NCBI RefSeq assembly: GCF_002113885.1
Contig: NW_018408893.1
Location: forward strand, 1 to 64,000
Origin: Mizuhopecten yessoensis
Taxonomy: Eukaryota
DNA length: 64,000 nt
Direction: 5' to 3'
Below are positions 34,841 to 58,539 of this stretch, piece by piece. The notes under the pieces are model-generated. The model made no database searches. It had not been told where the DNA came from and was given only the letters and a program-made list of their open reading frames with translations. The position numbers and the translations under genes were made by a program. How positions within the stretch are numbered: position 1 is the first letter of the stretch; every line of letters starts with the position of its first letter.

Positions 34841-37800
34841 TCAGCTGCACACTTCCACCATGACAGACTCTGTCTTGTTTGACGTCTCCTCCCGACAGGT
34901 CACATGGAGGGAACCCTCCCTAAAATACACAGAAGTTAAACCATAGAAATTCACCTCCTTGTACATTTTGTCACTACACTGTTATATAACATTCCTAGGT
35001 TTTGCCACTTCGGCCTTGCACCAATGACCCACTGGCCCTGCAGGTCTGGTTTTATTCAGTCTGATGTCCTACCAACAGCGAAGTCATTTAAGGAGTGCTA
35101 GTGATTGTAGATGATCCGATGGGTTAACCACTCGGCCACCACAGCCCACTGTTCCTTGCCAAATCAAGATTCATCCATGCAAGTTTTTGACTAATACAAT
35201 GTATCAAACATTTAACTCATAATCTTCACAATGACTCTCTTCTTACTATGCACGTTAAATAGTTTACGAAAAAAATACAATTAGAGTCACGTTACTCATG
35301 ATCAACACATAAAAAGAAATCCCAATTTTTACTGTACATGACAGGAGTTAACTTCATCTAAGTAAAACCAATAATCCTTATCTACAATACAAATGTAGAA
35401 ACAATTTTTACAGACTTTGTTTTAATGCTTCAACAAGAAAAATATAGTCGTTTTTCCTGATAACAAAAATTGACTCACCTTCTTAGATGGAAGGTTACTA
35501 ATACTTTAGCTGCTTCTGGTAAGTCTCTCATCACAAGCTGTAGAGAAAAGGAACACATATATTTATTCATATAGCATCTATGATGGTATGGTGGCCTTTT
35601 TATCCAGATTTGCCAGGATTTGAACTTGAAGCTGGCACAACTAGGCATTAAGGAGATAAGGTATACTGTGTTTCTTGCCATGCATAATCCCCATTGTTAG
35701 AAGTTGTGCATGTTACAATTTGTAGTTTGAGAAATAGCGATGACAACAATTATTTCCAAACTGACTGACAGATGGATGGAAGCCTGACCACAGACGAAAA
35801 GCTTTTCGAACAACCCACTATCTGATAATATGGCTAAATAAGGAAACAGAGACCTTGAAATATGTTGGCAGTATGCAATATCTCCAATGAAATATGGGCG
35901 ATCTTATTAAGGTTTTGCTTTACAAAAATCCAAAAGTTAGCATGATATGCTAAAATCTTTAAATAATATGCAATATTTGACAGTTTCACTTCAGTGATTG
36001 CCTGCTTAACAAATCATGTGTAAATTTGTGTAAATCCAGATTTTGGATATATGTAACTGTTCACACATAAAACTTTCTAAACAGGAGCCTAGAACAAACT
36101 AAACCGTGGACTTCATCTGTCCTTACTGACCTTAGCAAGGTCATCTGCAGTGTCCGGCTGTTGAAGGTCACCACACTCACACAGATCCATCTGGAGGGAG
36201 GTCTGATGTTCCCCCAAAATCACAGTCTCATGTTTACGGGATGGCAGTGGTGTCAGGGATGGGAACACAGGCTGCAGGTTTGTCGCCCCATTGCTACATG
36301 ACTAAATAAATGCACAAATTCCATATCAATTTGGTTGAAATAGAGTTGTGTAAGTAAATATTATTAATACACTTCTGTAACATCTAATACCATTTGATCT
36401 TTAAAACTAAAACATTTTTGTCTCTTTTTGTTTAAAATATCCAATATGTTCAAGTCTACTTATGTTTTGTACACAATTTAAATGAAAAAAACTACATGGC
36501 AAGAAAAGATATAGAAACTTACCCGTAAACACACTGCTTTAGACAAGCATTCTATTTCATTGTTTTCTGTGTTCTCTTTTACCTCTGTGGCATCACAGCC
36601 TGTTAGTATACCAGCCTACAAACAATACAGGAAAATACTCTATATCGGAAAATGTTCCACACATTAATTTTCGTCCTTTTCACACCTTTGTCAATACTTA
36701 AACTTTTACCCTTTTCACACCTTTGTAACGAGGGCGACTTTGTCTTTGGTTTGTTTGTGTTTTATGTCCTATTAATAGCTATGTTTATTTAAGGAGGTTT
36801 TGGTGGTGGAAGAAAGCCGGAGTTCCCAGAGAAAAACCACCGACCTGGAGACAGTACTTGGTGACTGCCCGAAGTAGGCCTCGAATCCGCGACCCAGTGG
36901 TGGATGGCTAGTGGAAGCAGAATGTCAGACGCCTTAACCACTTGGCCACCGACTTTGTCATGACAGCAAATGTTAGTAAAGAGTTTAGCATACACAGTAA
37001 TCATTTCAATTTAAAGAGCAGTATCAATGCCTAGAGAATATATACATTTTTGTATATTCAGATATGCAGTTATTAAAAATTTATAAAATTTACTAAAAAA
37101 TACTTTCAAAACAAATTATGATATAAAACAAAGTCAATAATTATCATATCATAATCAGTTGTACAGCCCCCAAACATGCATACCAATTATACAAAATACA
37201 ACTACATGCATAAACAAAAGCATATTACGGGTGAATGATTTCTAATTACCCAGGTTGATGTTTGACTCTATCGTATTGTGAAATGAAATTCAAACTTTAT
37301 ATAAGTTCCCTATTAATGATTAATGTTTCACATCTGAAGGAAACAGTAGCCTGAAAAAACACTTTCTTGTGCCAGCAAAAATGGTTGTCTTCTTCACTTG
37401 GTAAAATAGTTTGTATAAATGTAAATATTTAATGATGACTTAATAAAAGATTTTATCAACTATGGTAGATGTCATTGCAAAATGAGAAAACTAGCCCAAA
37501 CTTCATATGCAATCCTCTCCCATATATAGTATCAGGCCTTTAGCTAAAAAACAATATAGATAAACCACAACAGGATGAGACAGACTGATCATCCCCTGTT
37601 TCAACACCATGATTTATTTTCTGTCCTGTGGGTACATTAAATGTCTGTAATCTTAAGTGACTCGATTGCCCTACCTGTTTTGCTGCGCCGATCGCTATAA
37701 TTTCGTCTGGGGGAATGGAGCTTAGAACTTCAGCAGATTTGATATAGCCTTTAATGGTTTTCTGAACCAGAGGCATTTTTGCCCCACCGCCACAAACTAT

Positions 37801-40800
37801 CACCTATTGAAAGAGATAAATGTCTTATTTATTTTTCATCATAACATTGAGAAATAATTGATGGAAGGGAAATAACTCTTCTCATGTTTAAAAAAAAAGT
37901 TAATATGATTTCTTTCCTTGAAGAATACATTGACAATATGGATATGTTTGAATTGAAATTGAATTAACAAAACAAGTTATATAGATAAAATATTGAAAAC
38001 ATATTCTCAGACAAATCTGATTAATTTATATGTAACATGTATTATTTCAATATGTTTAAAGGAGCTTGCCTTGTCTACTTGGTCAGTGGATATACCGGCA
38101 TCACTACAGGCTGCATCTATAAGGCTGGTACACTGCTGCATCAGGAATCCTACCTGGTTCTCTAACCTCGCCCTAAATACACAGGTGATACTTCAAAATG
38201 ACACATTTAATTGAGGTACAAAATAAGATGTTTTCTGTATAGACACATCTGTATTAAACTAAAATCACTTTGTATAAATCATGGTAGCATGTGTCCCTCA
38301 CACACTCCTGTTTGTAGTTTCACTTTGTTAAGTTGGACACCAATCATGTCAGGTGTAATTACCTCTCCAATGACCATGTTTGGCCAAGGGAGACCTTAGA
38401 GCACCTTGTTCCTTTAGCATGTTTGTCTAGATCAGCTGACCACATAATTGGTCACTGGTCACTCCACCATCTGATCATCCTCCGATGTCAGACGCATGCA
38501 TAACTCATGAATGTCAAAACAAGATTTGCTGTATTTAATAACACTACTTCTTAACAGTGATACTCAACAATGCTAAGTATAATGTATACAATTTCATATT
38601 TCAATTAGGGGAACATTGTGCCAGCAGTTCTGAAATTAAAAGGATTTGCTTTAATTGGATTCGGGAAAAGCAGACTACACACTGCAGTGTTTTTTCCTAC
38701 CTAAATACAACAGTCTGCATTTTACTACGTGAATTAGGAAAATATAGTACTTTTTTTTTTTTTTTTTTTTTTTTTATTAAAATGGCACTTTTTTTGCTAG
38801 GATAAGTTGCATGTATGTAAACTTAGGCAAAAAAAACCCCAAAACTCCATGACAATACATGGAAATTGGCTGCAGTCAAATATAAATTCATATTAACAGT
38901 GTTTATCAAGTAAGAGGAGTTTAAAGAACATTTGCTGTACTTGACAGTTTGTTTGGTGGTCATACTTCTCCTCTGACAAAACTTCTCACGAGTGTCATAC
39001 AGAAGCAGTTTAATATGTGACAGTTTCTGTACTTGACAGTGTTTGGTGGTCATACTTCTCCTCTGACAAAACTTCTCACGAGTGTCATACAGAAGCAGTT
39101 TAATATGTCACAGTTTCTGTACTTGACAGTGTTTGGTGGTCATACTTCTCCTCTGACAAAACTTGGCCAGGAAGACCTTAAAACACCAATTTAATGTAGC
39201 ATGCTTGTGTCCAGATCAGCTGACCACAAATGGACAGTCAGTGACCCCTCCTTTGTCTGGTCATCAGGGTCTGGTGTTTTCCAAGCATGCGTAAGTCTGT
39301 CTGTTATTTTATGACTGAAATTTTGCATTTTTAAAAGTTATTAAATAAAATGTATTTTATCTAACTCTTGTAAATCTGTTTGGTACTACATGACTGGCAT
39401 TTTGCACAAAATGTTAAGAAATGAAATTTATTTAATTTTACCTAAATCCATACACTGTAGCTTACCTACATGATAAACACATTGTGCAGGCCTTAAACAT
39501 TACAATGGAGCTATCGATACCCAACAGTCTATCTGATAAACTAACTTGCTATTTTTTTTGGCATGTAGCTGATTTTTCAGCATCTATTTGTCAAGTCTTA
39601 CTATTTCGGAAAGAAACTCCCCATGTTTAATCATCTGCCACTTTTAAATTTTCAAACCAACAGAATTGCCTACAACTTGCATTATGTTATTGTATAATCG
39701 TTTCATTAAATAGAAAAAAACTTACACTACAGCACTTTATGGCACTGATATATCCCCCAAAAAGGGTTGTTGTAAGAACTTTTTACATGTTTACAGATTT
39801 TTCCTGTAAAAAACAAATTGACAGGTTGGCAAGTATGCCTCAGAAGGTAAGAAATTTCTTATATAAAACAGATTGACAAAACTTGTTTCAGAGCACATCA
39901 GGTAAATTGATAAATTTCTAGATCAAACAGGTCATTTTAAGCCATTAATATGTCTTTCACATCACAACCATATAGAGTGAGTGCTAACATCACTGAATAG
40001 TTGGCTTTAAAGTGCCAAATACATATGTTAAAATATTAAATAGAATTTTCCATTTTAAATGGCTGACTGTATTAATTGTTGCGAATGGGGATTGTGCATA
40101 TTAATTTGATATCTTCAAATTTATTTCAAAATCAAAGATTTTGTTATACATTACAGTCCCACAGCTGTAGTGAAAGGTTCTATAAATTAGCTTGTACACT
40201 TGATGTGATCACAGGGGTACTCGATTCTCACGAGTGTCATACAGAAGCAGTTTAATATGTGACAGTTTCTGTACTTGAATGTTTGTTTGGTGGTCATACT
40301 TCTCCTCTGGCAAAACTTGGCCAGGAAGACCTTAAAACACCAATTTAATGTAGCATGCTTGTGTCCAGATCAGCTGACCACAAATGGACAGTCAGTGACC
40401 ACTCCTTGGTCTGGCAACATGGGTCTGGTGTTTTCCAAGCATGCGCAAGTCTGTCTGTTACTTTGTGACTGAAATTTCACATTTAAGTTATCAAATAAAA
40501 TGTATTTTATCTAACTCTTGTAAGTCTTATCTAGTACTACATGACTGGCATTTTGCACAAAATGTTAAGAAATAAAATTTATTTAATTTTACCTAAATCC
40601 ATACATTGTAGCCTACCTACATGATAAACACACTGTGCAGGCCTTAAACATTACAATGGAGCTATCGATACCCAACAGTCTACCTGATAACTAACTTGCT
40701 ATTTTTTTTGGCATGTAGCTGATTTTTCAGCATCTATTTGTCAAGTCTTACTATTTCGGAAAGAAACTCCCAATGTTTTATCGTCACTTTTAAATTTTCA

Positions 40801-43800
40801 AACCAACAGAATTGCCTACAACTTGCATTATGTTATTGTATAATCGTTTCATTAAATAGTAAAAACCTTACACTACAGCACTTTATGGCACTGATATATC
40901 CCCCAAAAAGGGTTGTTGTAAGAACTTTTTACATGTTTATAGATTTCGCTATGTAGTTTTTCCTGTAAAAAACAAATCGACAGGTTGGCAAGTATGCCTC
41001 AGAAGGTAAGAAATTTCTTATATAAAACAGAATGACAAAACTTGTTTCAGAGCACATCAGGTAAATTGATAAATTTCTAGATCAAACAGGTCATTTTAAG
41101 CCATTAATATGTCTTTCTCATCACAACCATGTAGAGCGAGTGCTAACATCACTGAATAGTTGGCTTTAAAGTGCCAAATATATATGTTAAATTACTAAAT
41201 AGAATTTTTCATTTTAAATGGCTGACTGAATTAATTGTTGCGAATGGTGATTGTGCATATTAATCTAAAATTTTCAAACTTATTTTGACATCAAGGATGA
41301 TTTTGTTAAATAACATCACAGCTTGTACACTTGATGTGATCACAGGGGTACTCAATTCTCACGAGTGTCATACAGAAGCAGTTCAATATGTGACAGTTTC
41401 TGTACTTGAATGTTTGTTTGGTGGTCATACTTCTCCTCTGGCAAAACTTGGCCAGGAAGACCTTAAAACACCAATTTAATGTAGCATGCTTTTGTCCAGA
41501 TCAGCTGACCACAAATGGACAGTCAGTGACCACTCCTTGGTCTGGTCATCAGGGTCTGTTGTGTCTAAAGCATGCATGAGTTTCCTCAAGTATTAACAAT
41601 ACAGAAATTACTGTATGCATTTATCATAAAATAATAAACTTGCATGAATTCATGTTTTTAAATGCAATGCAAAAATAACAATATGAAAGTAGTAAGATGT
41701 TGATGACTAATTAACCAGTATAAGATATATAGCAAGACTCGGTTGATGAAAGATTTCAGGATGATACTAGGGTTACTCACAGAATGATAGCTAGTTATTC
41801 TGACTATCTTATAAGAATAACTGTTTAAAATTGAATAAGTTTAAAGTACAGTTTGTATTAAAAACTTCAAAATGACAAAAAAAATACAGATTTTAAATCA
41901 ACAAGAGTAAAGTGAAAAACATGACAACCAATTATCACAGGGTATACGTCAGACCCTTTCTTTCTAAACATTACGAAAAACATATTTGCACACCGCTTCA
42001 GTTTCCAACTGGAGAACGGAATCATGACATCAGAATAACAGCTAAATTTGATATGCCTTTTACATGACAAACTTTCATCATCTAGCTACAACAATTCATT
42101 TCAGTTTAGTACCAGATGAAAATTTTAATCTGACCTGGTCATTGTTTTAACAAAGTTTTCAGCAATATTTCAGATCAGATGGGAATATTTCAAAATTGAC
42201 CATCACATGTCGAATTTTGGAAATTCCAATGCTAACCAAGAGAGTATTTTGCTTTTACTTGACAACAAACATGTAATTTGGAGTAGCAGAGAAATGTATG
42301 AGGTTCGTATGATCATGTCAAGTCACACAGCTAACATGTACTATCAAATATGTATTAATAAAGGTAGGATTTAAACAGATTCTGTGACATACTTCATCTC
42401 TGGTTAAATGGACTGTTATTCATTATTATGAAGATGAAACATACCGTGTGAACTAGTTATGAAAGGGAACTCTAATCAAGTTCCATTATCAAACACAGTG
42501 AAATCTGTCTAGAAAATAACTTGCGTTGATTAATATGCATTTTCTCTTCATGAATACTCAACAAGAATTTCATGGTTGCAATATACCCACATTATATAAC
42601 AATAATCTTTATTAGAAACAACTAAAATCTGATTTCAATGATGATCAGTAAGTATTCACAGCAAATAATAATAACAGTAACTCCTAAAGTTTGTTTTCTT
42701 CCTTTGAGCTAAATAAGGAAATAAGGCTGTTGTAGGTTTACCTGGATACATTGTTGTGAAAGTCTACACCCTCGAACAGGGAGTCTACAGCACAGGACGC
42801 ATTATCAAGGGTTGATAGTGTGTGTTTACACCGCTCTGCTGCCATGTTGAGTTTACTGAGAGACCGTCGACTCTCTGTAACATCGAGTTTGTACTGTCTG
42901 AAACACCAACAAATACAATGACAGATACAGGCAACAAAACACTGGGTCACGTATTCTCTCCAGTCCATTTTAGTGAAGCAGTAGTGCTGTAAAGTTAAAA
43001 TTCAAAATTTGATTACTTATAAATTGACTGTTTTTTTATAATTTTCTTAATAGAAGACTTAATTGTTAATTTTGTAATTTACATAATTCATTTAAATAAA
43101 ATCTTAGTAAAACATTTTGTAAAAGTATGAATATCTTTTTCTGAAGATCAAAATTTATGAGAATGGGTTAATTACCTGAAGAATTCTGTTGCTAAGTAGT
43201 CTGTTAGGGCCTTGGTAAACTTTGTACCCGATAGCTGGGTACTGTTGACGGAGCCCATGATGCGATACAGACCATTGTGCTCCTTTACTACCGACACGCT
43301 GCTCGACTCTCCGCCCAAGCGGAATACCAACGTACAACTGAAATTAATAATAATTTGAGGTTCTTATATACCGCTTTATCACAACCTAGTTCGTAGGTCG
43401 TCTCAAAGCGGTGCACAAATTATTATCCGTGGTTATAGGGCCTTTGCAACCAGCCAATACCTTTTTCAGCTTCCTTTGGGAGCATACAGCCGGAGCTGCC
43501 ATTTCGGCACTAACAGCTAGCATTCAACAATTCTAGTACTGCCCAACCATGTACTCATTTACAGCTGAGTAAACTGGAACAAGTGGAGTAAAGTATCTTG
43601 CTCAAGGATACAACACAGTGCTGTGCCGTGCCGTGACTCGAACACTCAACCCTTCGGTCACGAGCCCGGCGTCCTACCACAAGACTACCGTGCCTCCAAT
43701 GTGTAGCACATAAATCAATAATACTCATCATTACATCTGTAGCCATTTTCCTGACCTTGAAAATCTGAAGACAATTTTCACCTGAAGAGAAACCTTGGTA

Positions 43801-46800
43801 GAATATCAGGTTAAAGTATGAACCTTTTATCATTATAGGACATTTAGGTCTATGGCAATAAATAGCAGAACTACTGCATATTGATAACATTTAATTATAC
43901 TTATAATGACAGTTTTCATTATCAAGGAGAAAGCAGCTCTATGTGCGACATTCTTTCAGCTTTATAACTGGTAAATATTTATTTATCAACAACAATCTGT
44001 TCATAGATAAAGTATGACTGTATGAAAGTTTATAAGCAAGTGGCCCATGGACCAGTGACTTTAGTAAGATTTTTATCAGATGAGTCCATGTCATTCTTTT
44101 GAAAAATGAATTTACATTGATAGGAAATAATGTGGGTTTTCAAAATGTTGGCGAGTCCCAAGGAAAAGCATGCGTACAGGACTCAAATATTTGTGTCCAG
44201 ACAACAACTGATGGACCTTAGCTTATTGCCGAAATTATTGAAACTGCCTCGGTATAATATCAGAAAGGTTTCAGTTGGAAATAAATTTTCAAGATGGCTT
44301 CAACCTGAAACCCCTTGTCACAAGGATGCTTGTAGGAAAATATTTATTAAAATTTGTCTGGTACACAATTCATGAATTTTACCTATATATCGAAGGTAAA
44401 GTTTGCCTCCTTGGCAGGGTCACATTTCGAGTTAAAGGATCTAGTTTGATATGAGGGTTTTTCATTCCCTGCCTTTTACAAATTCTAGTGAATACTTTGA
44501 AAAGTTGTGAAAAATTACCACTTTTGTAGTACAACACGAGGAAACAAGGAAAGCTTCTTGTGAAAAGGTTTTAAGATTTGACTTATTACCCATTTTGGCC
44601 AGTCAAACAATTTTGAGATGATACACTTTATGGTTTTCCTCTATATATCCCTATGTATATGTTGACCCCTTGATGCAGCTCCATATGGGGCTGGGGACTT
44701 AATATGAATATATTTAAGTACCTTACACTCTGCCATTACACTTACTTAAAAAGGAAGTTCCTTCCTACCACTGAAATAGCCTTACCCTGGTATTTATGGT
44801 ACTCAGCAGAAGGTTCCTTCCTACCACTGAAATAGCCTTACCCTGGTATTTATGGTACTCAGCGGAGGTTTTTCTAAATTGTCTATCATTACATCTGTCA
44901 AGCCCACCGCTTTTATCTCATGAAGGGAAGGGCATGTAGTGAGATCCCTTATCCCAATGATGTTTCATATAAAATCTGGTTGAAATCTGTTAAGTGGTTT
45001 CACAGAAGTCAGAAATGTGAAAAGTTTAAACATGACGAGCAAATATGGATGAAAATATCTCATTTGTACCTTAAGTTCAGGTAAATTTAAACTTCAAAAG
45101 CTGATTTTCAAATGCTTGTAAGTAACAATTGTGACATTTTATCCTAATGTTGAAGTATATGTGGGTGAAGATAGCATTTTTACCTTTCCGTTTTGTTGTC
45201 CAACTGTCCGACATCGTATGCCATGAGAGCTGCAAGAGGCTCCTTGATTATCCGAAGAATGTTAAAACCACCCGAGGCTGCAGCATCACTAGTATAAAAT
45301 ACACAACCAATTAGCCATCGCTGACTCAGACAACATTATAGAAATAGGCTTGATTTAAAATGTTTTAGTGCATATCTTTAAATTCACAGAAACAATATTG
45401 AGATTTAAGCAACAAATATTTCTGTGATTTCATTTTATATTTGAAAAGTTACATTATAATTAACCATCATAATGGAACAGCATTAGATGCAGATTTTGCT
45501 GAATTCACAAATGATGCAAATGTTTTTTTTTAGAAAATTCTTAAAAAATGATATCTGAAAAGTAACAGAGTGGGTTGTACTGAAAAGTAACAGAGTGGGT
45601 TGTACTGAAAAGTAACAGAGTGGGTTGTATTATGTGGTTTCAATGTGTTGACATGATCACCTGGTGGCGGCTATCTGTTCCTCTGTGAAGTCTGTAGGCA
45701 CTGTCAAAACAGAATCATGAATGTCTCCATCCCCGTGACTTTTGGCAATACCTAAAAGAGAAACAAAGATTCAGAGAATGAATGACAGATCTTCATTACT
45801 TCCTTATAACATTAATTATCCTTAATGTCTTAATTATTTCTCTGCATTTATAGGTACAATGTATACTGTACGTCATTATCAGTAAACTGATATAAATGAT
45901 AGATCTGAAAGCACCAACCAATTTTATTTGTCTGAAAAATCTTTTGATGCTGAAATCTAGTAAAGAACTTAAAGACACATTTTAAAATAAGAAACAAAAT
46001 TGGTGAGTTAGGGCTCACAGATATATCTCCTCAGGAAAGGGTTGATGTGTTTACTTGTGGCAGTAGCATGGTTTAAAATAACTCTGCAACACTTTCACAT
46101 CTTAGACAGCTACACTATAAATGCAGACAACTACACTTATGCCAGATGTGTTAAAGCATTTGAAGGGTTTGACTGATCAAGTGTCCTGTACACACACTTC
46201 TCACTATGGATAGAGGCATCATAAGCCCATCTCCATTTCTTTGATTCAGCAAACAATATGGCCCTCTGGGCTTACTACATGATTCAAAGGATATACAGTC
46301 ATAATTCTTAATCTCTTACCCATCATTGTTTTGAACACTGCCTCGGCCACAGTTCCTGGACTGACAAGAGTTGTCTTTCCTTTGAATTCCACTTGAAAGT
46401 GGGGCTCACCTTTATTAGGCACTACCTACATTGAATGACAAATGAAAAGGAGACATGATTTTGTCTGGGTATGTAAATAGAGCAATGGACAAGTAATCAA
46501 GTCCCTGGGTTGACTCCTCGCTATCAGAAACACCTGTAAAAAGTTATCTTGGTTATAATCTAATAGCAGTTTATACAACAAACAATACGCAAAAACACTG
46601 GTGTGCTGTTCAGACTAGAGGGTACTAGGTAGTTGATATCCCTTTTATGACAGATGCGAAATTTCAGCTGTTTCCACCAAAATTTACCAAACTTACACTG
46701 GGATAAAGTTGGCATATATATACTACTGATTCACTTTCATACAAGAAGTATACATGCCCCCCTTAATGTACCATGTGACCGCCAAATCACATGACTTCTA

Positions 46801-49684
46801 TTCCAGAAACTTGTGTCTCGGAAATGACGTATGAATACCGTGACTTTGTCACAGTCTTCAATGAATACCATGACTTTGTCACAGTCTTGAATGAATACCA
46901 TGACTTTGTCACAGTGTCAATGAATACTATGACTTTGTCACAGTGTCAATGAATACCATGACTTTGTCACAGTCTTCAATGAATACCATGACTTTGTCAC
47001 AGTGTCAATGAATACCACGACTTTGTCACAGTCTTCAATGAATACCATGACTTTGTCAGTCTTCAATGAATACCATGACTTTGTCAGTCTTCAATGAATA
47101 CCACGACTCTGTCATGCTTCAATGAATACCATGACTTTGTCACAGTGTCAATGAATACCATGACTTTGTCACAGCGTCAATAAATACCACAACTCTGTCA
47201 CAGTCTGCTGCTCATGCCTATAGATTGCTTTTTTTGTACTTCCCGTTACCATATATCTGTTAAAATTGTTGGTGTACATGGAAAGAATGATATATTTTCC
47301 CTTAATTAATGTAGCATGAAAAGTCAACAGTTACACAATTGTCCATCCCTTTACCTTAACTGCATAAGCATCTTTGTAAGACTGCAATTCTGGATCCTCC
47401 ATGGAACGACCAAGAACCTTCTTCACACAAGGGATTGTATTCTGGGTATTCCTGATATAGGCCTGTTTGGCAGCCATGCCAACTGCCTAAAAACAAATGT
47501 TGTTATACTCAATATTGAAAAAGTATATTGCAATAAGAATTCAGCATGGCAACTGCCTATATTGCCAGTATCAACAGTGCAGTGAATATGGAAAATACAT
47601 TGCATGTTATAACAAGTATGTAGTCAAAGTGGAATAGGGATTAGAGCTCGGACTGAAAATTCACTAGCAGATTAACATGTGAAGACAAGTCCAAGCAGAT
47701 TTTAGGCATAATCCACAACATTTCTTTCATACAGCATAACAACCTATATTAGATGGAAAGTTGTCATAATATTAATGACTTTATCGTCTGATGTAAAAGT
47801 TGTAAAACTGAAGCCAGATCATGTGTAAAATAGCTGGGAATTACTCTAGATAGGTTTTTATCTGGCTAATCCATCGCTAATTAATACTATCATTACTTAA
47901 GTAAATCAAAGGTTAAAATTTTTGAACAGAATAAGTTGTTGTCTTTCTCCACAAACCAGGAAACTATATGTTCTGCATTAATAGTGTCACTTTGATTATG
48001 CATGTTCTTCATGGTATGAAGGTCTTTCAATGAAGCTCAAATATAAGTTACAAGTAGCTCAAACTGAAGTAATTAGATTCATTTCAAATCTTCATCAGAA
48101 AAAGTGTGACATTTTTAGAATTTTAGAACTAGTTTCTTTAAAAATTTGTGACCAAGTTAGACAATTAAGACTGAATCATGTTTTTAATATTTTTCAAGGA
48201 AAGTGTCCAGACTATATATATATGAACCATGGTTTTACACCTCAAGCTTCAACCCATTTTACTAGATCTAAGCAATTTGGTTTTTGTATTCCTGCTATCA
48301 AAGGGGTATTAGCTTCAACTTTTTATTATATAATAGTGTGAAGGACTGAAATATGCTTCCTGGCAATATAAAGCAAATTTCAAAGAAAGGACTTTAAAAA
48401 CTCATGAGAAGAAACTTGTATTTTATGGAAACTGCAAAGGACAATCACAAAAATGACTTTTTATTCTAAAAGAACAAATGTAATTTGTATTAGATTGTCC
48501 ATTGTTGTTTTGATTAACTGTGATATCCTAAATATGTATTTGCCAATATTGTTTATAAAATTGCCTTAACCTTGACGTGCTCGTTTATGGACCCCATTGG
48601 ATTTTTTTATGTGTTATCCAAGGGCAACTGTTTATTTAACTTACTGTGACTACTAGTACAGTCTATGTCTTATGTTTGTTTGTATTTTTGTACCACTTGT
48701 GTAATTGTAATGCCTTTTACCTGAATAAACATTATTATTATGATTGAGGAAAACACCAACAGACAAATGTTTTTCTTCAATCGGATTAAGCTAAAATTAA
48801 AGCATAACATCTTTTCGTTCCTTATTTTAAATGTTTCCTAAAAAAGTTATAACGTGCAATAAATCTTATTCACAGCAACTTATTTGATATATTTACCCAT
48901 GCATATACCATTTAAAACTTAAGCTGACAGGGAAATTGTATGATGGATTGAGAGGTGGAAATGCACTAGATCACATAAAAGATTACAAGCTACTTTGTCT
49001 TGGGCGATATAGCTTTTGAAGCGAACATATCTTTTGGGATATATAAACGAGGCGTTAAGGTTTTTAAGGGGAAATTGGTTGGAATGGGGTGATGTGAAAC
49101 AAACTTGTGGCATACAGCTTTTGGGCGAATCATCTGACACCCTGCCCAACCTGTTAAAAGTGGCATAATGAGTACAGGTACTTACCTGTTCTAAATCAGT
49201 ATAGGCCACCATAGACGGTGTCGTTCTGTCTCCCAGGTCATTTGCAACAACATCAGTCTTCCCATCCTACAAAAAGTTTCTTACTCTTTAACAAAACACG
49301 CAATATAACTGAGCAACAATTACTAGTAAATGACAGTAAAAGGAATCAAATATTTTAAATGAGTGAAATCTTTAAGTTTTAAAATTTGAAAATAAATATT
49401 CAGTTATTGTTCTACATTACTTTGTGAAATGGCATAACATTCTTCAACACCATTCGAATGCACCCTATCATTCCCATCCCAAATCATTGTATTTGCACGT
49501 GCACATGTTGTGGGGATCCCAGTCGTATTCTAGATATCTTTTAGTTCAAATAATTAGCAAACTTATTCAAATGGGTATATGAGTATTTGATTAAAACGAC
49601 ATATATTCAGCGTTAACGATAATTAACCTTAAAAACAGCCAAACAAGCTGACGAGCTTCCAAAGTGTACACCGAAGGCTGCCAT
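34841..49684 (-). CDS. HSPA14: Heat shock 70 kDa protein 14 (Hsp70L1, ribosome-associated complex subunit), 14 exons, 507 aa
   Basis: Exons 49628-49684, 49186-49266, 47355-47486, 46320-46425, 45661-45751, 45184-45288, 43176-43337, 42742-42897, 38070-38172, 37675-37803, 36523-36615, 36131-36301, 35479-35537, 34841-34919. Phases are all consistent, total 1524 nt. Reads [36 protein letters not shown]...LRIIKEPLAA...FRLGG...CGGGAKMP...EGSLHVTCREETSNKTESVMVEVCS*. The GVH phosphate loop and truncated lidless C-terminus are characteristic of HSPA14. Confidence 0.96.
36745..36951 (-). mobile_element. tRNA-derived SINE, same family as 54160-54390
   Basis: GGTGGCCAAGTGGTTAAGGCG head, GGATTCGAGGCC B box, core ggtcggtggtttttctctgggaactccggc, (aaac)n tail. 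Confidence 0.85.
38344..38499 (-). ncRNA. Putative box H/ACA snoRNA, divergent copy A (HSPA14 intron 8, sense)
   Basis: GCATG...CATGC 5' hairpin, H box AAAGGA (38415-38410), 3' hairpin AGGTG/CACCT with upper stem TCTCC/GGAGA, ACA (38349-38347) 14 nt from the upper stem. Confidence 0.7.
39127..39290 (-). ncRNA. Putative box H/ACA snoRNA, copy B
   Basis: GCATGCTTG...CAAGCATGC, H box ACATTA, TTGGTG/CACCAA hairpin, ACA. Confidence 0.6.
40281..40444 (-). ncRNA. Putative box H/ACA snoRNA, copy C
   Basis: Same architecture as copies B and D. Confidence 0.6.
41412..41575 (-). ncRNA. Putative box H/ACA snoRNA, copy D
   Basis: GCATGCTTT...AAAGCATGC, H box ACATTA (41482-41477), 3' hairpin TGGTG/CACCA with TCTTCCTGGC/GCCAGAGGAGA, ACA (41417-41415) 14 nt from the upper stem. 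Confidence 0.65.
43343..43697 (-). mobile_element. Full-length tRNA-derived SINE (second family) with (ATT)n tail
   Basis: Head GGAGGCACGGTAGTCTTGTGGTAGGACG...TGTTCGAGTCAC, core ccttgagcaagatacttta, tail gcggtatataagaacctcaaattattatt. Confidence 0.8.
44390..45090 (-). mobile_element. Degenerate HINE-like element
   Basis: Segments resemble 32500-32660 (aatgtgaaaagttt...catttgtaccttaagttcaggtaaat); contains an internal ~56-bp duplication near 44756-44870. Confidence 0.45.
45555..45629. repeat. 25-bp tandem repeat x3
   Basis: Unit ctgaaaagtaacagagtgggttgta. Confidence 0.9.
46830..47205. repeat. ~29-30-bp minisatellite, ~12 copies (HSPA14 intron 3)
   Basis: Unit atgaataccatgactttgtcacagtcttca or gtgtca variant. 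Confidence 0.92.
47800..48741 (+). mobile_element. 5'-truncated CR1/L2-group LINE relic, antisense in HSPA14 intron 2
   Basis: Frameshifted ORF2 C-terminus HFDYACSSWYEGLSMKLKYKLQVAQ...LRLNHVFNIFQGKCPDY...STFYY, ending aataaacattattatta. Confidence 0.75.
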
Positions 49685-49981
49685 GTTTTAAATCTCGTCT
49701 CTTTTCGAGATTAACCCCCTGATGACCCAATGAACTGTCACAACCCGGAAGTAGTGTTTCCACCAATCACAGAGCGACAAATGTACATGTGCTTCCTACA
49801 GGACACGTAATTTTTACCGGCATCTACGTACACGTTCAGTTTGTATGAAAAATAACAGACTCCATAGAATTAAGAAATCATTGATTAGTGAGAACTGTTG
49901 TCGTGACAAACGGAGCAGTTTAAAGGACATATCATACGACGAAATAATTAAGAAACGAATAGGCCTATAATTGCTGAAGAA
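49685..49981. promoter_or_regulatory. Bidirectional promoter shared by HSPA14 and MANF/CDNF
   Basis: 297 bp between divergent ATGs; ETS-type CCGGAAGT at 49745-49752; CCAAT boxes at 49727 and 49763. Confidence 0.8.
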
Positions 49982-52900
49982 ATGATGGGGATTCAGAAAT
50001 TGTTGCTGTGTCTGACAGTTATCGCGTGGTGCGTTGTCAATGTCAATGGGAAGTACAGACCAGAAGAATGTGAAGGTAATTTGAGTGTGGCGAGACCATG
50101 TCTGGGTAGACCCATTATTTAATGGACAATAAGAAGGCATTATCATTAGGGAACAATGGTGTCAGTTTTGTCCACTCGGTGGTAAGTTGCCAGTCGCTTC
50201 AGTATCTGTCCAAGACGTTTCGGAGGAATATATGAATTAGCTTGTGATTTCCTTAGTTTCCGTACTTTATAAATATTACTTTCTCTTAAGTAAACCCGTA
50301 CCAACTTTGTTTGGTGTACGTTTGTATGGGACCGAAACGTCTAGAATTCTCTATCTGACAGGGGTGTCAGACGTTTCGCCCTAAAACCGTTACGCCCCAA
50401 ATTTGATTCATATCGCCCAAACCAGTTCGTCCCAAAAAAAACATTACACCCCAAATAGTTCGCCCCAAAACAATATAGCGCCCCGTTCCTAAAAAAAATA
50501 AACAACTAATCCATGTTTTCATGTGCTATTATAAAGAAAATATTTCTTTTAGGTATATGTACATCTTGTCATCAAACGTTGATGCCTGTAGCTATTAAAC
50601 ATGTTATTTGTGACTCCAGGAAATCTCCAAATTAGCACTTGTACAAAATAAATAATAAAACCTTCAGAATTTGTATCAATTTTATCTTTGCAGCATGTGT
50701 GAACTTCATAAAGACATTTGATGAAACTTTATCAGCTGATGCACGCAAAAGTATGGATTCCATCAAGACAGAATTAATAGACTTTTGTGAAAACACCAAA
50801 GTAAAAGAATATGAAAGAATTGTAAGTATAAATATTAAAAAACACATCTTAAATGTGGGTTAGTAACATTTCTAACTGTAGCTGGAATAATGTATACAAT
50901 AGTTTTAACAGAGCACGTTTACTCTAGTGGTAAAAACTTCTTTATAATTCATACAAAATAAACATGTAAATAATATTATACACTAATACTTACTCATGCA
51001 CCTGGTAAGGCCAGACAAAAAATATATATATGTGTTTCCTGTAACCTGTAAAATTTAAGGTAGGTAGGTAACAAATTGTATTTCAAAAACTAATTATACC
51101 CCCACAACGAAGTTTGGGGGGGGGGGTATACTGGAATCACCCTGTCTGGATGTCTGTCTGTCGTCCGCAGTAACTTGTCCGGAAAACTCCTCCTTAATTA
51201 ACAGGTGGATTTCATTGAAACTTTGCATGAATTATCAGTATCTTATGTAGTTGTGCAATGGCATGCATTTTAATTTGGGACTTCAACCCTTTTTGATGGA
51301 GTTATGCCCCTTTGTGCAAAATACTTGTACGCGCAACTCCTCCTTAATGGACAGGTGGATTTCATTAAAACTTTGCTAAATGATCCATATCTTATGGAGT
51401 TGTGCACCAGCATTTTAATTTAGGATTTCAACCATTTTTCATGGAGTTATGCCCCTTTGTGCGAAATACTTGTTTATTTTTCTGTTATTTTATTTTTTTG
51501 TTTTTATATAAAATAGTGATTAACTCATTACTGGTGAGAAACTATATTGCTTTGCATTAGTAAGCCTTAATCTTACAGTTCTGTTTTATATAGTAGCGGG
51601 GGTATTAGTTAGCCTTTGGCTTACAGTTCTAGTTTTATATGGTTTATATTGAAGTGATCTTGACTTTAACTGTGCTTCTTTGAAAATTCCCTTAGAAAGT
51701 TTATGGTAGACACAAAAAATAATGGTAGGTACGGTTACCAGAAACACCAATTTTTTTTTGTTTGGCCTTAAGAAGGATTGCTCTCATCAATATCTTGCCT
51801 ACTACGAGTGCTGTGTTGACTTATGCTCCTTTATGGACTTGTCGAAACAGTGTTCGCTCGATATCTCAAGTAATTATTAACGGATTAACTTCAAACTTCA
51901 CAACAAGGTTAATTACCATGAAACCTCGGACAAGTTCGATAACCGCCATTATCCGACCGTAATTATTGGAGTTATTCCCCTTGGTTTCATTAATGCGATG
52001 CATGTGTTCCATGATGTTGAATTGCACTCATTGATCTACCAGTTATGTTGAATGATTTCTCTTTCAATATCAATTACTCACAAATACTTCATATATTTCA
52101 ATCATACAAACAACTGCTCATTCAATGTGTGACGGGCGTATTATATACCGCTCGCGGTAACCTTGTTAACACTTTCAATACCACTTACCGGTTTTAATCT
52201 TTGCGTTAGAACTATTGAGACTAGTGTCACGTCATTCTGTAATTGACAGTGACACTGTTCGTCTTCTTGAATTTCATTGACATTGCCATCACCAGAACTG
52301 TCTGTTTCACTAGCTTCACCATTATTTACCACAGAAAAAAATCTTCATACAAAAAATATTGACACGTTGACAATTATCAGTATGTTTTTAAAGCGCAACA
52401 ACAACCCTGCGAAGATGGTTTAAAGTAAAATGAACATAGGCAACAATTTTCAGAATTAATTTATACAACATGCTGATTTTTGGTTTCATGAAATTGGTAA
52501 CAATTTTCAGAATTTTAAACTTAATATAGGGAAAATAGGTAAATTACACTTGGAATGGGGTCAATTACTGACTAAAATTAGTGACTTTTTTTTTTTAGAA
52601 TAAGGGATTTGAGCTGGGGGCATAATTGATATGCAAATAAGAAGTATAGTGCTGTTTTGTGTTATACATATTTTAGCTTGTACATGTATAATGCATTATA
52701 TTTATATTGTAGTGTTACTACATTGGAGGACTGAAGACTTCCGCTACAGCAATACTCAATGAGATCACACGACCGCTGACCTTTAATAAGCCGGCCGAGA
52801 AGATTTGTGAAGTACTTGACAAAAAAGATTCCCAGATTTGTGAAGTAAAAATAAGTAAGTTTTAGATTGTTTGCTCTTCTATAACAAAACATGATTGATA

Positions 52901-53681
52901 TTCTATGTACATGAAAAAAAAATATTTGGTAAAATTCAGGTATACCAAGAAATAAAACAGAAAAGTTGCAGGGGTCAAACTCCGAACTTTTAATTGTAAA
53001 ACGTACACTTTACCATTGTTGTTATCTAGAGCTTATCAATTCACAGCACTATAACTAGTGTCTAATTTTTGGGCTACAAAGCCTGTGAAAAAATAAATGA
53101 ACACTGAAAGATACATAATTGGTAAGTTCTCTATTAAGCCTGAAAAAAACTCCTTTTGGTTACTTTAGTTTCTATTTATAGAATGGAGAATATTCAAAGT
53201 GAGAAAAAAATCCTTCATGTTGAAACTTTTACAGTTATAACTGATTAAAATTAATAATTCTTTTGATCATTTAACCTTCATTATTAAATGAATGAACTTT
53301 ATCTGTTCTAAAAGAATTATGAAACAATTCTATAATACATGTACCATACAATTTATGGTTCCAAACCCTGGGTCAGGGTGTCCTGGTGAGAGATGAGAGC
53401 ACTATATAGCACCATAGACTTCACCACCCAATCTCCTTTGTCATTCATTTTCTTGCAATATCTTTGGTAATTGAATTACAGAGAAGAAGATTAACCTTGC
53501 TGAGGTTGACCTGAAGAAATTGCGTGTTAAGCAGCTGAAGGAAATTCTCAGTGACTGGAATCGCAGTGATGCTTGTAAAGGATGTGCCGAGAAATCAGAC
53601 TTCATAAGCATAGTAGAGGAACTTATGCCCAAGTACGACCAAGCCGCATACAAACTACGACAACAAAAGCTAGAGTTATAG
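49982..53681 (+). CDS. MANF: MANF/CDNF (ARMET) family ER-stress neurotrophic factor, 4 exons, 187 aa
   Basis: Exons 49982-50075, 50694-50821, 52713-52854, 53482-53681 (564 nt, GT-AG, phases consistent). Signal peptide, CEAC, CYYIGG..TSAT, KIC...[34 protein letters not shown]-terminal KLEL. Confidence 0.96.
51094..51634 (+). mobile_element. HINE-like element in MANF intron 2
   Basis: ttataccccc...gggggtata inverted repeat, (gtct)n tract, ~150-bp internal duplication, 3' gcgggggtatt...cagttctagtt. Confidence 0.7.
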
Positions 53682-54159
53682 TTTGGTTTAGATTATTTTG
53701 TTCAAATTTTATTTATGAAGTATGTTTTTTTTAAGAGAGAGGGAGAGAGAGATTGTGTATGTTGTTAAAACATATTTGGTATGTTAAGTTGCTGTGTATG
53801 TATATTTTTGTGTGCTATAGACAGTGTTGGTCAGAACAAATGAAAATTTGATATTGATACATGTACATGTTGGTGGAAAACTTGGTCTCTGAATGGCTTA
53901 ATGTGAAGATTAGCATGAAGTTTTCTTTTATAGGAAAGTTAATTTGTAAAATTAGAGGAAACTCCAATTATATTTCTTTCTAGAGTCAATGCAATTGATG
54001 ATTAAACCACAATGTGATTCTATAAATTAATATCAAATGTGTCCCTACCCAAATTGGTACAGTTTTGACATTTTCTTTTCATATTTAGAATTCCATTGAT
54101 GACAGGTACTTTTTCTTCATATTTTAAAAAGTCTGCCTATTGTTCTTAAGGAAAAGGGG

Positions 54160-54390
54160 CAGGCTGTGGTGGCCAAGTGGTTAAGGTGTCTGACATTCTG
54201 CTACAACTAGCTCTCTACCACTGGGTCGTGGGTTCGAGGCCTATGTGGGGCAGTCGCCAGGTACTGGCCGTACATATAGGTCGGTGGTTTTTTTCCGGAA
54301 ACTCCGGCTTTCCTCAACCACCAAAACCGGGCACGTCCTTAAATGACCATAGCTGTTAATAGGACGTAAAACACAAACAAACCAAACCAA
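54160..54390 (+). mobile_element. tRNA-derived SINE downstream of the MANF stop codon
   Basis: GGTGGCCAAGTGGTTAAGG A box, GGTTCGAGGCC B box, core ggtcggtggttttttccggaaactccggc, (aaac)n tail. Confidence 0.85.
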
Positions 54391-56659
54391 TCTTGCTGGA
54401 AAATGTCTACTTTGGATTCCAAGTAATATACTAGTATCAACCTTTTGTACATGTTGAGGACCGATTCTTTGACCATTTACCGTAAGATAAAAATCTGGAC
54501 AGAATATGATTTAGACAGAGTGCAAAAATATGGTGATCATATGTTTGAGGTGAAAGAAAATGTATCTGCTGTAAACATAGACAATCATGATAACAAAATA
54601 ACAGATCTTTTGGGGTTTTCTGATGACAAAATTTAGATTTGTGTTGAAGGTTGAAATATATACATTTTTTATATATGGCTTTAAAAATTTTGATCACTAA
54701 TAAAATTAGACCAGCATTTTAAAATTATTTGTCTATCTATCAGGAGATTAAATTCTTCCTTGCAAGAATGAAATAAATCAGACTTTCGCTACTAATGTAA
54801 AAAGTTACATACCCTGGTACTCATAAATAAAATCTTTGATCGTATTTTCTGTGCAGTAATGCAGAGAAAAATCTGTTCAACTTCTTGTATTTGTATTTCA
54901 TATTGATCAGGTAAGCATCATCTTCGCTAGCCAAGTGTTCGCTTACGTGGAGTGTATACGAAGCGAACACTTAGCTAGCAAAGATGGGCAAGCATTATCA
55001 GTGAATATATCAATCATTTCAAGTTACCTGCCAATATTAAAATGTCATCGATGGATGTTAGTATGGAATGTTTTGAGATTTAGAGAACATTTATTTTTGG
55101 AATGAAAGGCATTCAAGTTAGATAATGTAAGTATGGAATATTTTGAGATTAAGAGAATATTAATTTTTGGAATGAAAGAAGTTAAATAGTTAGAAAGTTG
55201 TTCGCTAATAAAAAATGACAATATTTATGAATGCATGTATGGATGATTTCTAGTACAATGAGAGTTTGATAGTGAATACAAATCCTTTTTGATGTATTAT
55301 TCTCATCTTGTTAAAATTTCCTCATACCTTCATAAACATATATACATACTGTATGTCAGCTATGTTTGTTAGTAAAATCACTGAATTCTCACAGAATTTT
55401 TAGGCTGAAATCAGAGAAATTTGGATGGCCTCATGGCATAGCTTGTTGTTTCCACAAAGTCAAGCTTATATATGTGTACCAAAAAGAATTCATATGAATG
55501 TGGTGAATTATATTTGAAATAAAACCTTTGAAGTAAAAAAACATATATATATCAAACTTCTTACTAATATTTTAGTATTGTATATATGAATTAGACAAAA
55601 AAATAGCTTTCTAAAACCAAAAAAAAAAAAATGCTCAAATCCAGATTCTATATAATAACCCAAGATGGCTGCACAAAATCAGACATGTCCGTCTGTTACA
55701 AAGTTATCCTTTCTGTGGCACTATAGATTGTGGCAACTGTAATTAATTTGGTTTTAAATCTTGTATCTTACATCAAGAATTTATTAGAAAATACTAAAAT
55801 GGCAAATGGCTGATGTTGACGGCACATAGTATGAAGTCCATAATCAAGGATTGAAGGGGGCGGGGGGGGCTTTCATCTGTCCATGTTATAAACAGTTGTT
55901 ACGACCTTGGGCTGTAGTAAGGTCTGCTGTTTATAAGCAAGCTGCAGATATAGTTGACCAGCAAATGCCATCTGATATCATCAGAGATATAGTTTGCTGG
56001 AGGTACTCAATACTGAAACATCTGGAATTCCACGGAGAGTTTTAAAGCTATAGAATTTGCTTGAATCCTCGACTCGCAGACTATATGGAAATTGTGATAG
56101 AAAGATTTTCACTTCAGGTTTATTCTTTTCTGTTTAAACATTTTTAAAAAGAGAAATTCACTAACTAGTTGTGTATAATAACAATCTTATGAATATAACT
56201 GACTTGCAGTACTTGTAGATTGGTCATTACAATTTTAATGTAGTTACATTGCATACATTGCGATACTATAAATTGTATAACAAGTTGCAATGTGTTACTA
56301 TGACATTTGTACTGTGAAGGGATCCAGTGTCTGTTACTGGAATAGGTCATAATGTTTTGTCCAGGAGAATGCCTGGTAATTAGTTTTCATGAAAGTGCTA
56401 AGCTTTGTTTATGTTAATTCGTACAATATATTGCCTACATTTTTTCAACACTTGGTTTTGTTTTAAAAGCAGTGATCAATACCCTTGGTAAATCTGAAGC
56501 GTTAGATTGTGCAGACTTGCATGTACTATCTAGCACAGCTACCAGGTTTGAACCTATAGGGATAAATATTCACAATATCATCAAATTTACAAATGAAATT
56601 TAAAAATGGTAATTTTCATGTTTAAACACTTAAATGCAGATATTGATTAACACATCACG

Positions 56660-56873
56660 TAGTTTTAGTTGTTCCTTAAAGTAAAATATAGCATACTATC
56701 ATCAAATGTTGTGCTACCCCGGGGCCTGTTCATTTTAGTTCCTTAAAGTAAAATATAATTTCATATTATCATCAAATGTTGTGCTACCCCAGGGCCTGTT
56801 AATTTTAGTTGTTCCTTAAAGTAAAATATAATTTCATATTATCATCAAATTTTGTGCTACCCCGGGGCCTGTT
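56660..56873. repeat. ~70-bp tandem repeat x3
   Basis: Unit ttccttaaagtaaaatata...atcatcaaatgttgtgctacccc.gggcctgtt. Confidence 0.9.
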
Positions 56874-58400: not shown

Positions 58401-58539
58401 CAGCAGGTTGAAGATTCTGCTAATTGTATGTAGGTGGTGTGCATGGTGCAGGACTTGCGTCGAAAGGTTAAAAGTTGTTAAAAACTGGATAAAAACAAAG
58501 GTCCTCAGAGTTTTGACACACTGGCCATGAAGGCATCCA

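What the first reader, a model, noticed from the sequence alone, without database searches (positions are those of the whole stretch)
49628..50075. HSPA14 and MANF/CDNF head-to-head pair mirrors the human HSPA14-CDNF arrangement
Seen: divergent ATGs 297 bp apart with CCGGAAGT and two CCAAT boxes between them. Established: human CDNF and HSPA14 are adjacent and divergently transcribed on 10p13. Inference: the pair predates the protostome-deuterostome split, so vertebrate CDNF rather than MANF keeps the ancestral locus, and a co-translational chaperone may be co-regulated with an ER-stress factor. I saw no exact ERSE, ERSE-II or UPRE consensus.
Basis: partly seen in the sequence, partly recalled or inferred. 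Interest (0 to 1): 0.7.

Follow-up and report, generated by a model that had tools for sequence, protein, structure and literature searches.

The report
Ancient HSPA14–MANF head-to-head gene pair
In a scallop genome the ribosome-chaperone gene HSPA14 and the single MANF/CDNF gene start 297 bases apart on opposite strands, and the same pairing in a snail, a sea urchin, amphioxus and next to mammalian CDNF shows it is an old bilaterian arrangement, real but of a known kind.

Summary
The window is Mizuhopecten yessoensis contig C5566. It carries a 14-exon HSPA14-like Hsp70 gene on the minus strand (ATG at 49684) and a 4-exon MANF/CDNF-family gene on the plus strand (ATG at 49982). The gap between the start codons is 297 bp and holds CCGGAAGT and two CCAAT boxes. 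It has no ERSE, ERSE-II or UPRE consensus.

RNA reads confirm the first splice junctions of both genes. They show no spliced upstream non-coding exon within 6 kb.

The MANF/CDNF gene is the only one in this genome.

In a survey of 11 MANF/CDNF loci from other animals:
- The same head-to-head partner, an Hsp70 gene of about 505-570 aa with the same 19-20 codon first exon, 307-461 bp away, is present in Littorina, Lytechinus, Branchiostoma and next to marmot CDNF.
- No Hsp70 gene lies within 10 kb upstream in Ostrea, Ptychodera, Tachypleus, Exaiptasia, Sycon or at toad MANF.

So the pair predates the protostome-deuterostome split, has been lost repeatedly, and in vertebrates stays with CDNF. Co-regulation is untested. 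I found no paper describing this linkage outside vertebrates. It is a new member of a known kind, a conserved bidirectional gene pair, and of moderate interest.

The parts
34841..49684 (-). HSPA14-like Hsp70 gene, coding span from ATG 49684 to stop 34843-34841. It has 14 coding exons. The in-frame pieces sum to about 515 aa.
   Evidence: Pfam HSP70 hits to exons. Stop-free pieces read and listed: e4 ~46422-46321, e5 ~45752-45660, e6 ~45290-45183, e7 ~43333-43175, e8 ~42899-42741, e9 ~38171-38070, e10 ~37803-37675, e11 ~36615-36526, e12 ~36295-36134, e13 ~35540-35478, e14 ~34945-34844. Boundaries of e4-e14 are approximate and come from homology and frame only. The start of e4 (46422) is supported by a 45-read loose end at 47352.
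49628..49684 (-). HSPA14-like exon 1, 19 codons. It carries the degenerate N-terminal motif [10 protein letters not shown] where the canonical gene has GIDLGTTYSC.
   Evidence: Sequence. Junction 49628|49266 in 22, 13 and 8 reads. The same exon and the same boundary occur in Littorina, amphioxus, urchin and marmot. The canonical scallop Hsp70 N-terminus is shown.
49186..49266 (-). HSPA14-like exon 2
   Evidence: Pfam HSP70 positions 19-43. Both junctions are seen in RNA reads.
47352..47486 (-). HSPA14-like exon 3
   Evidence: HSP70 profile positions 45-90. Junction 49186|47486 in 40, 22 and 12 reads, and a loose end at 47352 that reads on into exon 4.
49685..49981 (.). 297-bp stretch between the two start codons: the shared divergent promoter and both 5' UTRs. 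GC is 0.39 and CpG observed/expected is 1.17. There is no TATA box.
   Evidence: RNA depth here is low but not zero, and no joint leads from it to an upstream exon.
49727..49731 (+). CCAAT box 1 (NF-Y-type consensus)
   Evidence: A CCAAT in this same orientation is present in the equivalent gap of all four other linked species.
49745..49752 (+). CCGGAAGT, the ETS/GABP-type consensus
   Evidence: The ETS core CGGAAG/CTTCCG also occurs in the Littorina and amphioxus gaps but not in urchin or marmot.
49763..49767 (+). CCAAT box 2
49982..50075 (+). MANF/CDNF-family gene exon 1: start codon, signal-peptide-like hydrophobic N-terminus and the first Cys. It ends in phase 1.
   Evidence: 100% identical to residues 1-31 of P0152. 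Junction 50075|50694 in 15, 9 and 29 reads.
50694..50821 (+). MANF exon 2 (ARMET_N, first half)
   Evidence: Pfam ARMET_N E 2.5e-5. Junction 50821|52713 seen in RNA.
52713..52854 (+). MANF exon 3 (ARMET_N, second half)
   Evidence: Pfam ARMET_N E 1.6e-18. PDB CDNF and MANF hits at E ~5e-14. The loose end at 52854 reads on into exon 4.
53482..53681 (+). MANF exon 4 (ARMET_C SAP-like domain with CKGC, C-terminal KLEL, stop TAG 53679-53681)
   Evidence: Pfam ARMET_C E 1.5e-20. PDB MANF E 8e-18, CDNF 1e-13. 100% identical to P0152 residues 123-187.

Best explanation
The locus is a compact, TATA-less bidirectional promoter. The start codons are 297 bp apart and the two transcription starts are probably only 120-160 bp apart. 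From it the scallop transcribes, in opposite directions, its HSPA14 ortholog (the Hsp70-like subunit of the ribosome-associated complex) and its only MANF/CDNF-family gene (an ER-resident, secreted proteostasis factor). The arrangement was inherited from the last common ancestor of bilaterians. It survives in molluscs (scallop, periwinkle), an echinoderm, a cephalochordate and, after the vertebrate duplication of MANF/CDNF, next to CDNF. It has been broken independently in several lineages. Shown here: the gene identities, the geometry, transcription and splicing of both genes, the single-copy status of MANF/CDNF in this genome, and the cross-phylum linkage. Inferred: both core promoters share the CCAAT (NF-Y-type) and ETS-type elements that lie between the two starts, so a breakpoint in this short interval would cripple at least one gene. 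That would explain the long persistence without requiring functional co-regulation.
For: Geometry and motifs.
Gene identities.
RNA: all first junctions of both genes are seen in three raw-read RNA runs. No joint leads from either exon 1 to an upstream exon inside 47300-53299. The longest overhang into HSPA14 exon 1 is 57-63 nt, which suggests a very short 5' UTR. Coverage in 49700-49899 is consistent with a MANF 5' UTR of roughly 100-165 nt.
Copy number: only one ARMET_C and one ARMET_N locus in the 988-Mb genome.
Linkage: there is a head-to-head Hsp70-Pfam partner in Littorina (505 aa, 331 bp), Branchiostoma (567 aa, 319 bp), Lytechinus (519 aa, 307 bp) and next to marmot CDNF (509 aa, 461 bp).
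Partner identity: window exon pieces e1-e7 match those partner genes in order and orientation, and the first exon is matched only in them, not in ten other Hsp70 loci of the scallop genome.
Shared motif: a CCAAT in the same orientation occurs in all four other gaps, joint chance about 0.01.
Literature: cdnf-hspa14 adjacency in a teleost and in goat; a single HSPA14 in bivalves.
Against: The linkage is absent within 10 kb in Ostrea edulis, Ptychodera flava and Tachypleus, so any constraint is not absolute. It is also absent in the two non-bilaterians sampled. The libraries look unstranded and depth is given in 200-bp bins, so the two transcription starts are not mapped. Junction counts do not rise and fall together in the three runs (HSPA14 e1-e2: 22, 13, 8; MANF e1-e2: 15, 9, 29), which does not suggest tight co-expression, though n = 3. 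The ETS core is missing from the urchin and marmot gaps. HSPA14 orthology rests on length, first-exon motif and boundary, position and partial best-hit evidence. No full-length tree was built, and the PDB holds no HSPA14 chain to compare.
Confidence: 0.85

Rival explanations
1. The pair is kept by selection for co-regulation. One promoter couples a co-translational chaperone on the ribosome with an ER-stress factor, so that both rise together when protein-folding load rises.
For: Both genes are transcribed in the same RNA samples. The pair has been retained for over 500 million years in four phyla. A CCAAT box recurs in all the gaps; CCAAT is the NF-Y half of the ERSE that drives mammalian MANF (PMC10405524).
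Against: No ERSE, ERSE-II, UPRE or HSE consensus is present. Junction counts do not co-vary across the three runs. The pair was lost in oyster, an acorn worm and a horseshoe crab, all of which kept MANF. In vertebrates the strongly UPR-induced paralog, MANF, is the one without the partner.
Confidence: 0.2
2. The head-to-head pairs arose independently in molluscs and in deuterostomes, so the resemblance to human CDNF-HSPA14 is coincidence.
For: The linkage is missing from several lineages in between and from both non-bilaterians sampled.
Against: Two specific single-copy genes out of roughly 20,000 ended up head-to-head with gaps of 297-461 bp in five lineages. The same Hsp70 subtype is the partner each time, with the same first-exon motif and boundary.
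Confidence: 0.02
3. The adjacency is an assembly or annotation artefact of this window.
For: The assembly is fragmented (82,659 contigs).
Against: The window has no N. RNA reads from independent studies cover both first exons and their junctions at these coordinates. DNA-like runs from other studies hold up to 0.6 of the stretch's words. Independent assemblies of four other species show the same arrangement.
Confidence: 0.01

Closest known systems
Vertebrate CDNF-HSPA14 divergent gene pair (human 10p13)
   Same: The same two gene families, the same head-to-head orientation and a gap of the same order: 461 bp between coding starts in marmot against 297 bp here. The Hsp70 partner has the same first-exon structure.
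   Different: The scallop gene is the unduplicated MANF/CDNF gene. Its sequence is closer to MANF than to CDNF: exon 4 scores 66 bits against MANF and 53 bits against CDNF. The scallop gap is AT-rich (GC 0.39) while the marmot gap has GC 0.59, and the marmot gap has no ETS core.
Bidirectional promoters enriched in NF-Y (CCAAT) and GABP/ETS sites, as described for mammalian genomes (from my own knowledge, not checked in a paper here)
   Same: Short gap, no TATA box, CCAAT boxes and a perfect CCGGAAGT lying between the two starts, and high CpG observed/expected.
   Different: No factor binding or reporter data exist for this promoter. The ETS site is not conserved in all the linked species.
Ancient metazoan microsynteny blocks (gene pairs kept together by cis-regulatory constraint)
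   Same: Two unrelated genes have stayed adjacent across protostomes and deuterostomes.
   Different: The likely constraint here is a shared core promoter a few hundred bases long, not long-range enhancers lying inside a bystander gene. I found no paper naming this pair.
Mammalian MANF promoter with ERSE and ERSE-II (UPR target)
   Same: The downstream gene is homologous, and a CCAAT box, the NF-Y half of an ERSE, is present.
   Different: No CCAAT-N9-CCACG, ATTGG-N-CCACG or TGACGTGG/A occurs in 49500-50200. Vertebrate MANF has no Hsp70 partner.

Membership tests
MANF/CDNF (ARMET) family | N-terminal saposin-like ARMET_N domain | tested here: met
   Pfam PF20145: exon 3 at E 1.6e-18 and exon 2 at E 2.5e-5. 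PDB MANF and CDNF N-domains at E ~5e-14.
MANF/CDNF (ARMET) family | C-terminal SAP-like ARMET_C domain with a CXXC motif | tested here: met
   Pfam PF10208 E 1.5e-20. CKGC aligns with the CKGC of human MANF.
MANF/CDNF (ARMET) family | Eight conserved cysteines, a signal peptide and a C-terminal KDEL-like tail | tested here: met
   Eight Cys are read in the exon translations, at the columns invariant in alignment A1. The tail is KLEL. The hydrophobic N-terminus was read by eye only; no signal-peptide predictor was run.
HSPA14 (Hsp70L1, RAC subunit) subfamily of Hsp70 | Hsp70 nucleotide-binding domain | tested here: met
   Pfam PF00012 hits on five exons of the window in profile order, positions 17-373.
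HSPA14 (Hsp70L1, RAC subunit) subfamily of Hsp70 | Short protein of about 509 aa without the C-terminal lid or EEVD tail | tested here: met
   The exon pieces sum to about 515 aa and the frame ends ...VEVCS then stop. A canonical scallop Hsp70 is 647 aa and ends ...TVEEVY. The partner genes are 505, 519, 567 and 509 aa. The exons were not joined into one protein.
HSPA14 (Hsp70L1, RAC subunit) subfamily of Hsp70 | Orthology to vertebrate HSPA14 (reciprocal best hit or a tree) | tested here: inconclusive
   The first exon (motif and boundary) matches only the MANF/CDNF-neighbour genes, including the marmot 509-aa gene, and none of ten other scallop Hsp70 loci. Pieces e2-e7 score best on the Littorina partner, but amphioxus and marmot score no better than the scallop's own Hsp70 paralogs on the most conserved pieces. 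No full-length tree was possible, because no full-length HSPA14 protein id could be obtained without joining exons. My reading that all 14 exons follow human HSPA14 end to end is from memory of the human sequence.
Bidirectional promoter | Two divergent genes whose transcription starts lie less than 1 kb apart | tested here: met
   The start codons are 297 bp apart, which bounds the distance between the transcription starts. Both genes are transcribed and spliced.
Bidirectional promoter | Mapped transcription starts and shared functional elements | not testable with these tools
   The reads are unstranded and binned at 200 bp. CAGE or 5' RACE and reporter assays are needed.
UPR-responsive promoter (ERSE / ERSE-II / UPRE) | Consensus CCAAT-N9-CCACG, ATTGG-N-CCACG or TGACGTG(G/A) | tested here: not met
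   No match on either strand in 49500-50200.

The most novel reading that the evidence does not exclude
The HSPA14-MANF/CDNF divergent promoter is a regulatory unit more than 550 million years old that is kept by selection, tying output of the ribosome-associated chaperone to that of the ER proteostasis factor. On this reading vertebrate CDNF inherited the ancestral regulatory setting, and the ERSE-driven, strongly UPR-inducible MANF promoter is a rebuilt derivative that arose after the duplication.
Probability: 0.15. Interest if true: 0.6.

Novelty: new member of a known kind. Interest (0 to 1): 0.42.

Why it matters
MANF and CDNF are studied intensively as protective factors for neurons and pancreatic beta cells, yet it is not well understood why vertebrates keep two paralogs with different regulation. 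This finding gives the pair an evolutionary anchor. The unduplicated ancestral gene already shared a promoter of about 300 bp with HSPA14. CDNF, the faster-evolving paralog, kept that setting, and MANF, the paralog with the more conserved sequence, lost it. That makes the question of whether CDNF's regulation is the older one directly testable. It also adds a clean, short, cross-phylum example for work on why some divergent promoters resist rearrangement. It does not reveal a new kind of system.

Tried and rejected
- PDB searches with HSPA14 exon pieces. They were meant to separate HSPA14 from other Hsp70s, but the PDB has no HSPA14 chain. The best hits were HSPA2 and fungal Ssz1-type chains at E ~1e-3, which is not discriminating.
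- ESM Atlas search with exon 7. It returned only generic Hsp70 fragments.
- The look-up of encoding contigs for the window's own MANF (P0152) and for Montipora MANF (P0172). Neither is on record.
- The foreign 29 letters at the 5' end of the X6 contig, a possible upstream exon. They are not in the window at up to 3 mismatches, and no canonical splice site lies at 49817. I treat them as a chimeric or variant contig.
- The Exaiptasia 514-aa upstream neighbour. Its length made it a suspect for a diverged HSPA14, but neither the window pieces nor a canonical Hsp70 give any tblastn hit, so I rejected it.
- The sigma-70 and terminator scan. It is not relevant to a eukaryotic promoter.
Exons were searched one at a time by reference, and full-length comparisons used database proteins only.
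Full report
**What is at the coordinates**

The window has no N and is AT-rich, like an invertebrate genome. It is contig C5566, bases 1-64000, of a 988-Mb assembly in 82,659 contigs.

On the minus strand an ATG at 49684 opens a 19-codon exon that ends at 49628 before a GT. On the plus strand an ATG at 49982 opens an exon that ends at 50075. Between the two lie exactly 297 bp. They contain CCAAT at 49727 and 49763 and CCGGAAGT at 49745-49752. No ERSE, ERSE-II, UPRE, HSE or TATA consensus is present.

CCGGAAGT occurs only twice in the 64 kb (0.64 expected), so its presence in this gap is unlikely to be chance. Two CCAAT boxes on their own are not significant.

**The plus-strand gene**

It has four exons: 49982-50075, 50694-50821, 52713-52854 and 53482-53681.

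- Exons 2 and 3 match Pfam ARMET_N and exon 4 matches ARMET_C.
- Exons 3 and 4 match the solved structures of human MANF and CDNF.
- Exon 4 scores higher against MANF (66 bits) than against CDNF (53 bits).
- Exons 1 and 4 are 100% identical to the NCBI protein 'MANF homolog [Mizuhopecten yessoensis]', 187 aa. The window is therefore Yesso scallop, and the gene is already annotated.
- The protein has eight cysteines, CKGC in the C-domain and a KLEL tail.
- Six-frame searches of the whole genome with both ARMET profiles find this locus and no other. The scallop has a single MANF/CDNF gene, as reviews state for invertebrates (PMC10405524).

**The minus-strand gene**

Pfam HSP70 hits lie in profile order at 49269-49186, 47486-47349, 43330-43175, 42899-42714 and 37812-37669. 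Reading the minus-strand frames gives 14 coding pieces from 49684 down to a stop at 34843-34841.

- The pieces sum to about 515 aa, against 647 aa for a canonical scallop Hsp70.
- The N-terminus reads [10 protein letters not shown] where canonical Hsp70 has GIDLGTTYSC.
- There is no EEVD-type tail.

These are the features of HSPA14, which is single-copy in bivalves (PMC11268181, PMC11750468). Orthology is well supported but was not proven by a full-length tree.

**Transcription**

Three raw-read RNA runs and one contig run were laid on 47300-53299.

| Junction | Reads in the three raw-read runs |
|---|---|
| HSPA14 e1-e2 | 22, 13, 8 |
| HSPA14 e2-e3 | 40, 22, 12 |
| MANF e1-e2 | 15, 9, 29 |
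| MANF e2-e3 | 8, 3, 35 |

- Loose ends at 47352 and 52854 read on into the next exons.
- No joint connects either first exon to an exon further upstream within the 6 kb.
- The longest overhang into HSPA14 exon 1 is 57-63 nt, which suggests a very short 5' UTR.
- Depth in 49700-49899 is low but real and rises in 49900-50099. This fits a MANF 5' UTR of roughly 100-165 nt.
- If so, the two starts are about 120-160 bp apart, with both CCAAT boxes and the ETS site between them. This is inference: the libraries look unstranded and depth is binned at 200 bp.

**Synteny survey**

MANF exon 4 was searched against the representative library. The full-length hits were named with two word searches. Twelve look-ups of encoding contigs followed, with 10-kb flanks. 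Ten returned a locus.

Loci with a head-to-head partner that carries Pfam HSP70:

| Species | Partner length | Gap between coding starts |
|---|---|---|
| Littorina saxatilis | 505 aa | 331 bp |
| Branchiostoma floridae | 567 aa | 319 bp |
| Lytechinus pictus (both copies of a local duplication keep exon 1) | 519 aa | 307 bp |
| Marmota CDNF | 509 aa | 461 bp |

tblastn with the window's exon pieces finds e1-e7 of these partners in order and on the expected strand. Each species has the same 19-20 codon first exon ending at the same residue before GT. That first exon is matched in none of ten other Hsp70 loci fetched from the scallop genome.

Loci with no Hsp70-like sequence within 10 kb upstream, tested with both the window pieces and a canonical Hsp70:

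| Species | What lies upstream |
|---|---|
| Ostrea edulis | no gene called |
| Ptychodera flava | an MFS transporter |
| Tachypleus tridentatus | no gene called |
| Exaiptasia | a 514-aa gene without Pfam hits |
| Sycon | an FSIP1-like gene |
| Bufo bufo MANF | no gene called |

'Absent' here means no shared promoter. A partner more than 10 kb away is not excluded.

**Reading of the survey**

The pairing of these two specific genes occurs in Mollusca (two classes), Echinodermata, Cephalochordata and Vertebrata, with gaps of about 300-460 bp. Independent origin cannot reasonably explain this. The pair was present in the bilaterian ancestor and has been broken several times since. The two non-bilaterians sampled lack it, so an older origin is neither shown nor excluded.

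In vertebrates the partner stays with CDNF. This also holds in a teleost BAC and in goat (PMC6579814, PMC9902602). The paralog that kept the ancestral neighbour is therefore the one that diverged more in sequence. If the duplication was part of the vertebrate whole-genome duplications, both loci descend equally from the ancestral one, and the HSPA14 copy beside MANF was lost. I could not test this.

**Promoter content across species**

All four other gaps have at least one CCAAT in the same orientation as in scallop and no ATTGG. The joint chance is about 0.01 from shuffles, and about 0.003 from 300-bp tiles of the same loci. The ETS core is present in Littorina (twice) and amphioxus, but not in urchin or marmot.

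A CCAAT/NF-Y-type element is thus the one recurrent feature. No ERSE-like composite was found in the scallop. Co-regulation of the two genes remains a hypothesis. The junction counts in three runs do not move together, but three runs prove nothing.

**Literature**

Full-text searches gave the following:

- HSPA14 + CDNF and MANF + HSPA14 returned only papers that list the genes side by side in vertebrate regions or in expression tables.
- MANF + CDNF + synteny, ARMETL1 + HSPA14 and CDNF + 'bidirectional promoter' returned nothing.

I found no description of the invertebrate linkage. It may still sit unnamed in genome-wide microsynteny lists that I could not search.

**Verdict**

The finding is real and correctly interpreted. 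It is an ordinary kind of feature (a conserved bidirectional gene pair), not described for this pair as far as I could find. It has a modest but concrete bearing on how MANF and CDNF diverged.

Noticed in passing
window 49817-50436: In the metatranscriptome run X6 a 680-nt contig at depth ~256 runs unspliced from the MANF 5' UTR through exon 1 into intron 1. It has a 20-nt deletion at 50396 and 29 foreign letters at its 5' end. The three raw-read runs have almost no depth in 50100-50499. It could be an intron-retaining or short transcript, another allele, or a chimeric contig.
   Followed up: partly
window 51100-52300 (MANF intron 2): A repeat with RNA depth of about 100-200 in every run, many variant letters and 'goes back ~151' joints. 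It looks like a dispersed or tandem repeat family that is transcribed elsewhere in the genome.
   Followed up: no
window 49114-49142 and 50362-50390: Inverted 29-nt arms, 83% complementary, inside larger repeats rich in 'cgccccaaa'. They bracket both first exons and are probably two copies of a dispersed element in opposite orientation.
   Followed up: partly
L004 14866-16291, L005 18456-19286, L010 26816-27514: A DUF4504 (PF14953) gene lies just downstream of MANF in the acorn worm, amphioxus and the sea urchin. In the scallop its only copy is on another contig, C462. This is a second microsynteny that looks deuterostome-wide.
   Followed up: partly
L010 and L011 (Lytechinus pictus CM031017.1, about 53 kb apart): The MANF gene, together with HSPA14 exon 1 and the 307-bp gap, is present twice in near-identical copies. 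This is either a recent segmental duplication or an uncollapsed haplotype.
   Followed up: no
window 54160-54400 and about 36790-37010: tRNA-like SINE fragments, seen by eye, downstream of the MANF 3' end and in an HSPA14 intron. ARAGORN calls no tRNA in 53500-64000.
   Followed up: no
window 63239-63246: The only other CCGGAAGT in the window. It may mark another promoter.
   Followed up: no
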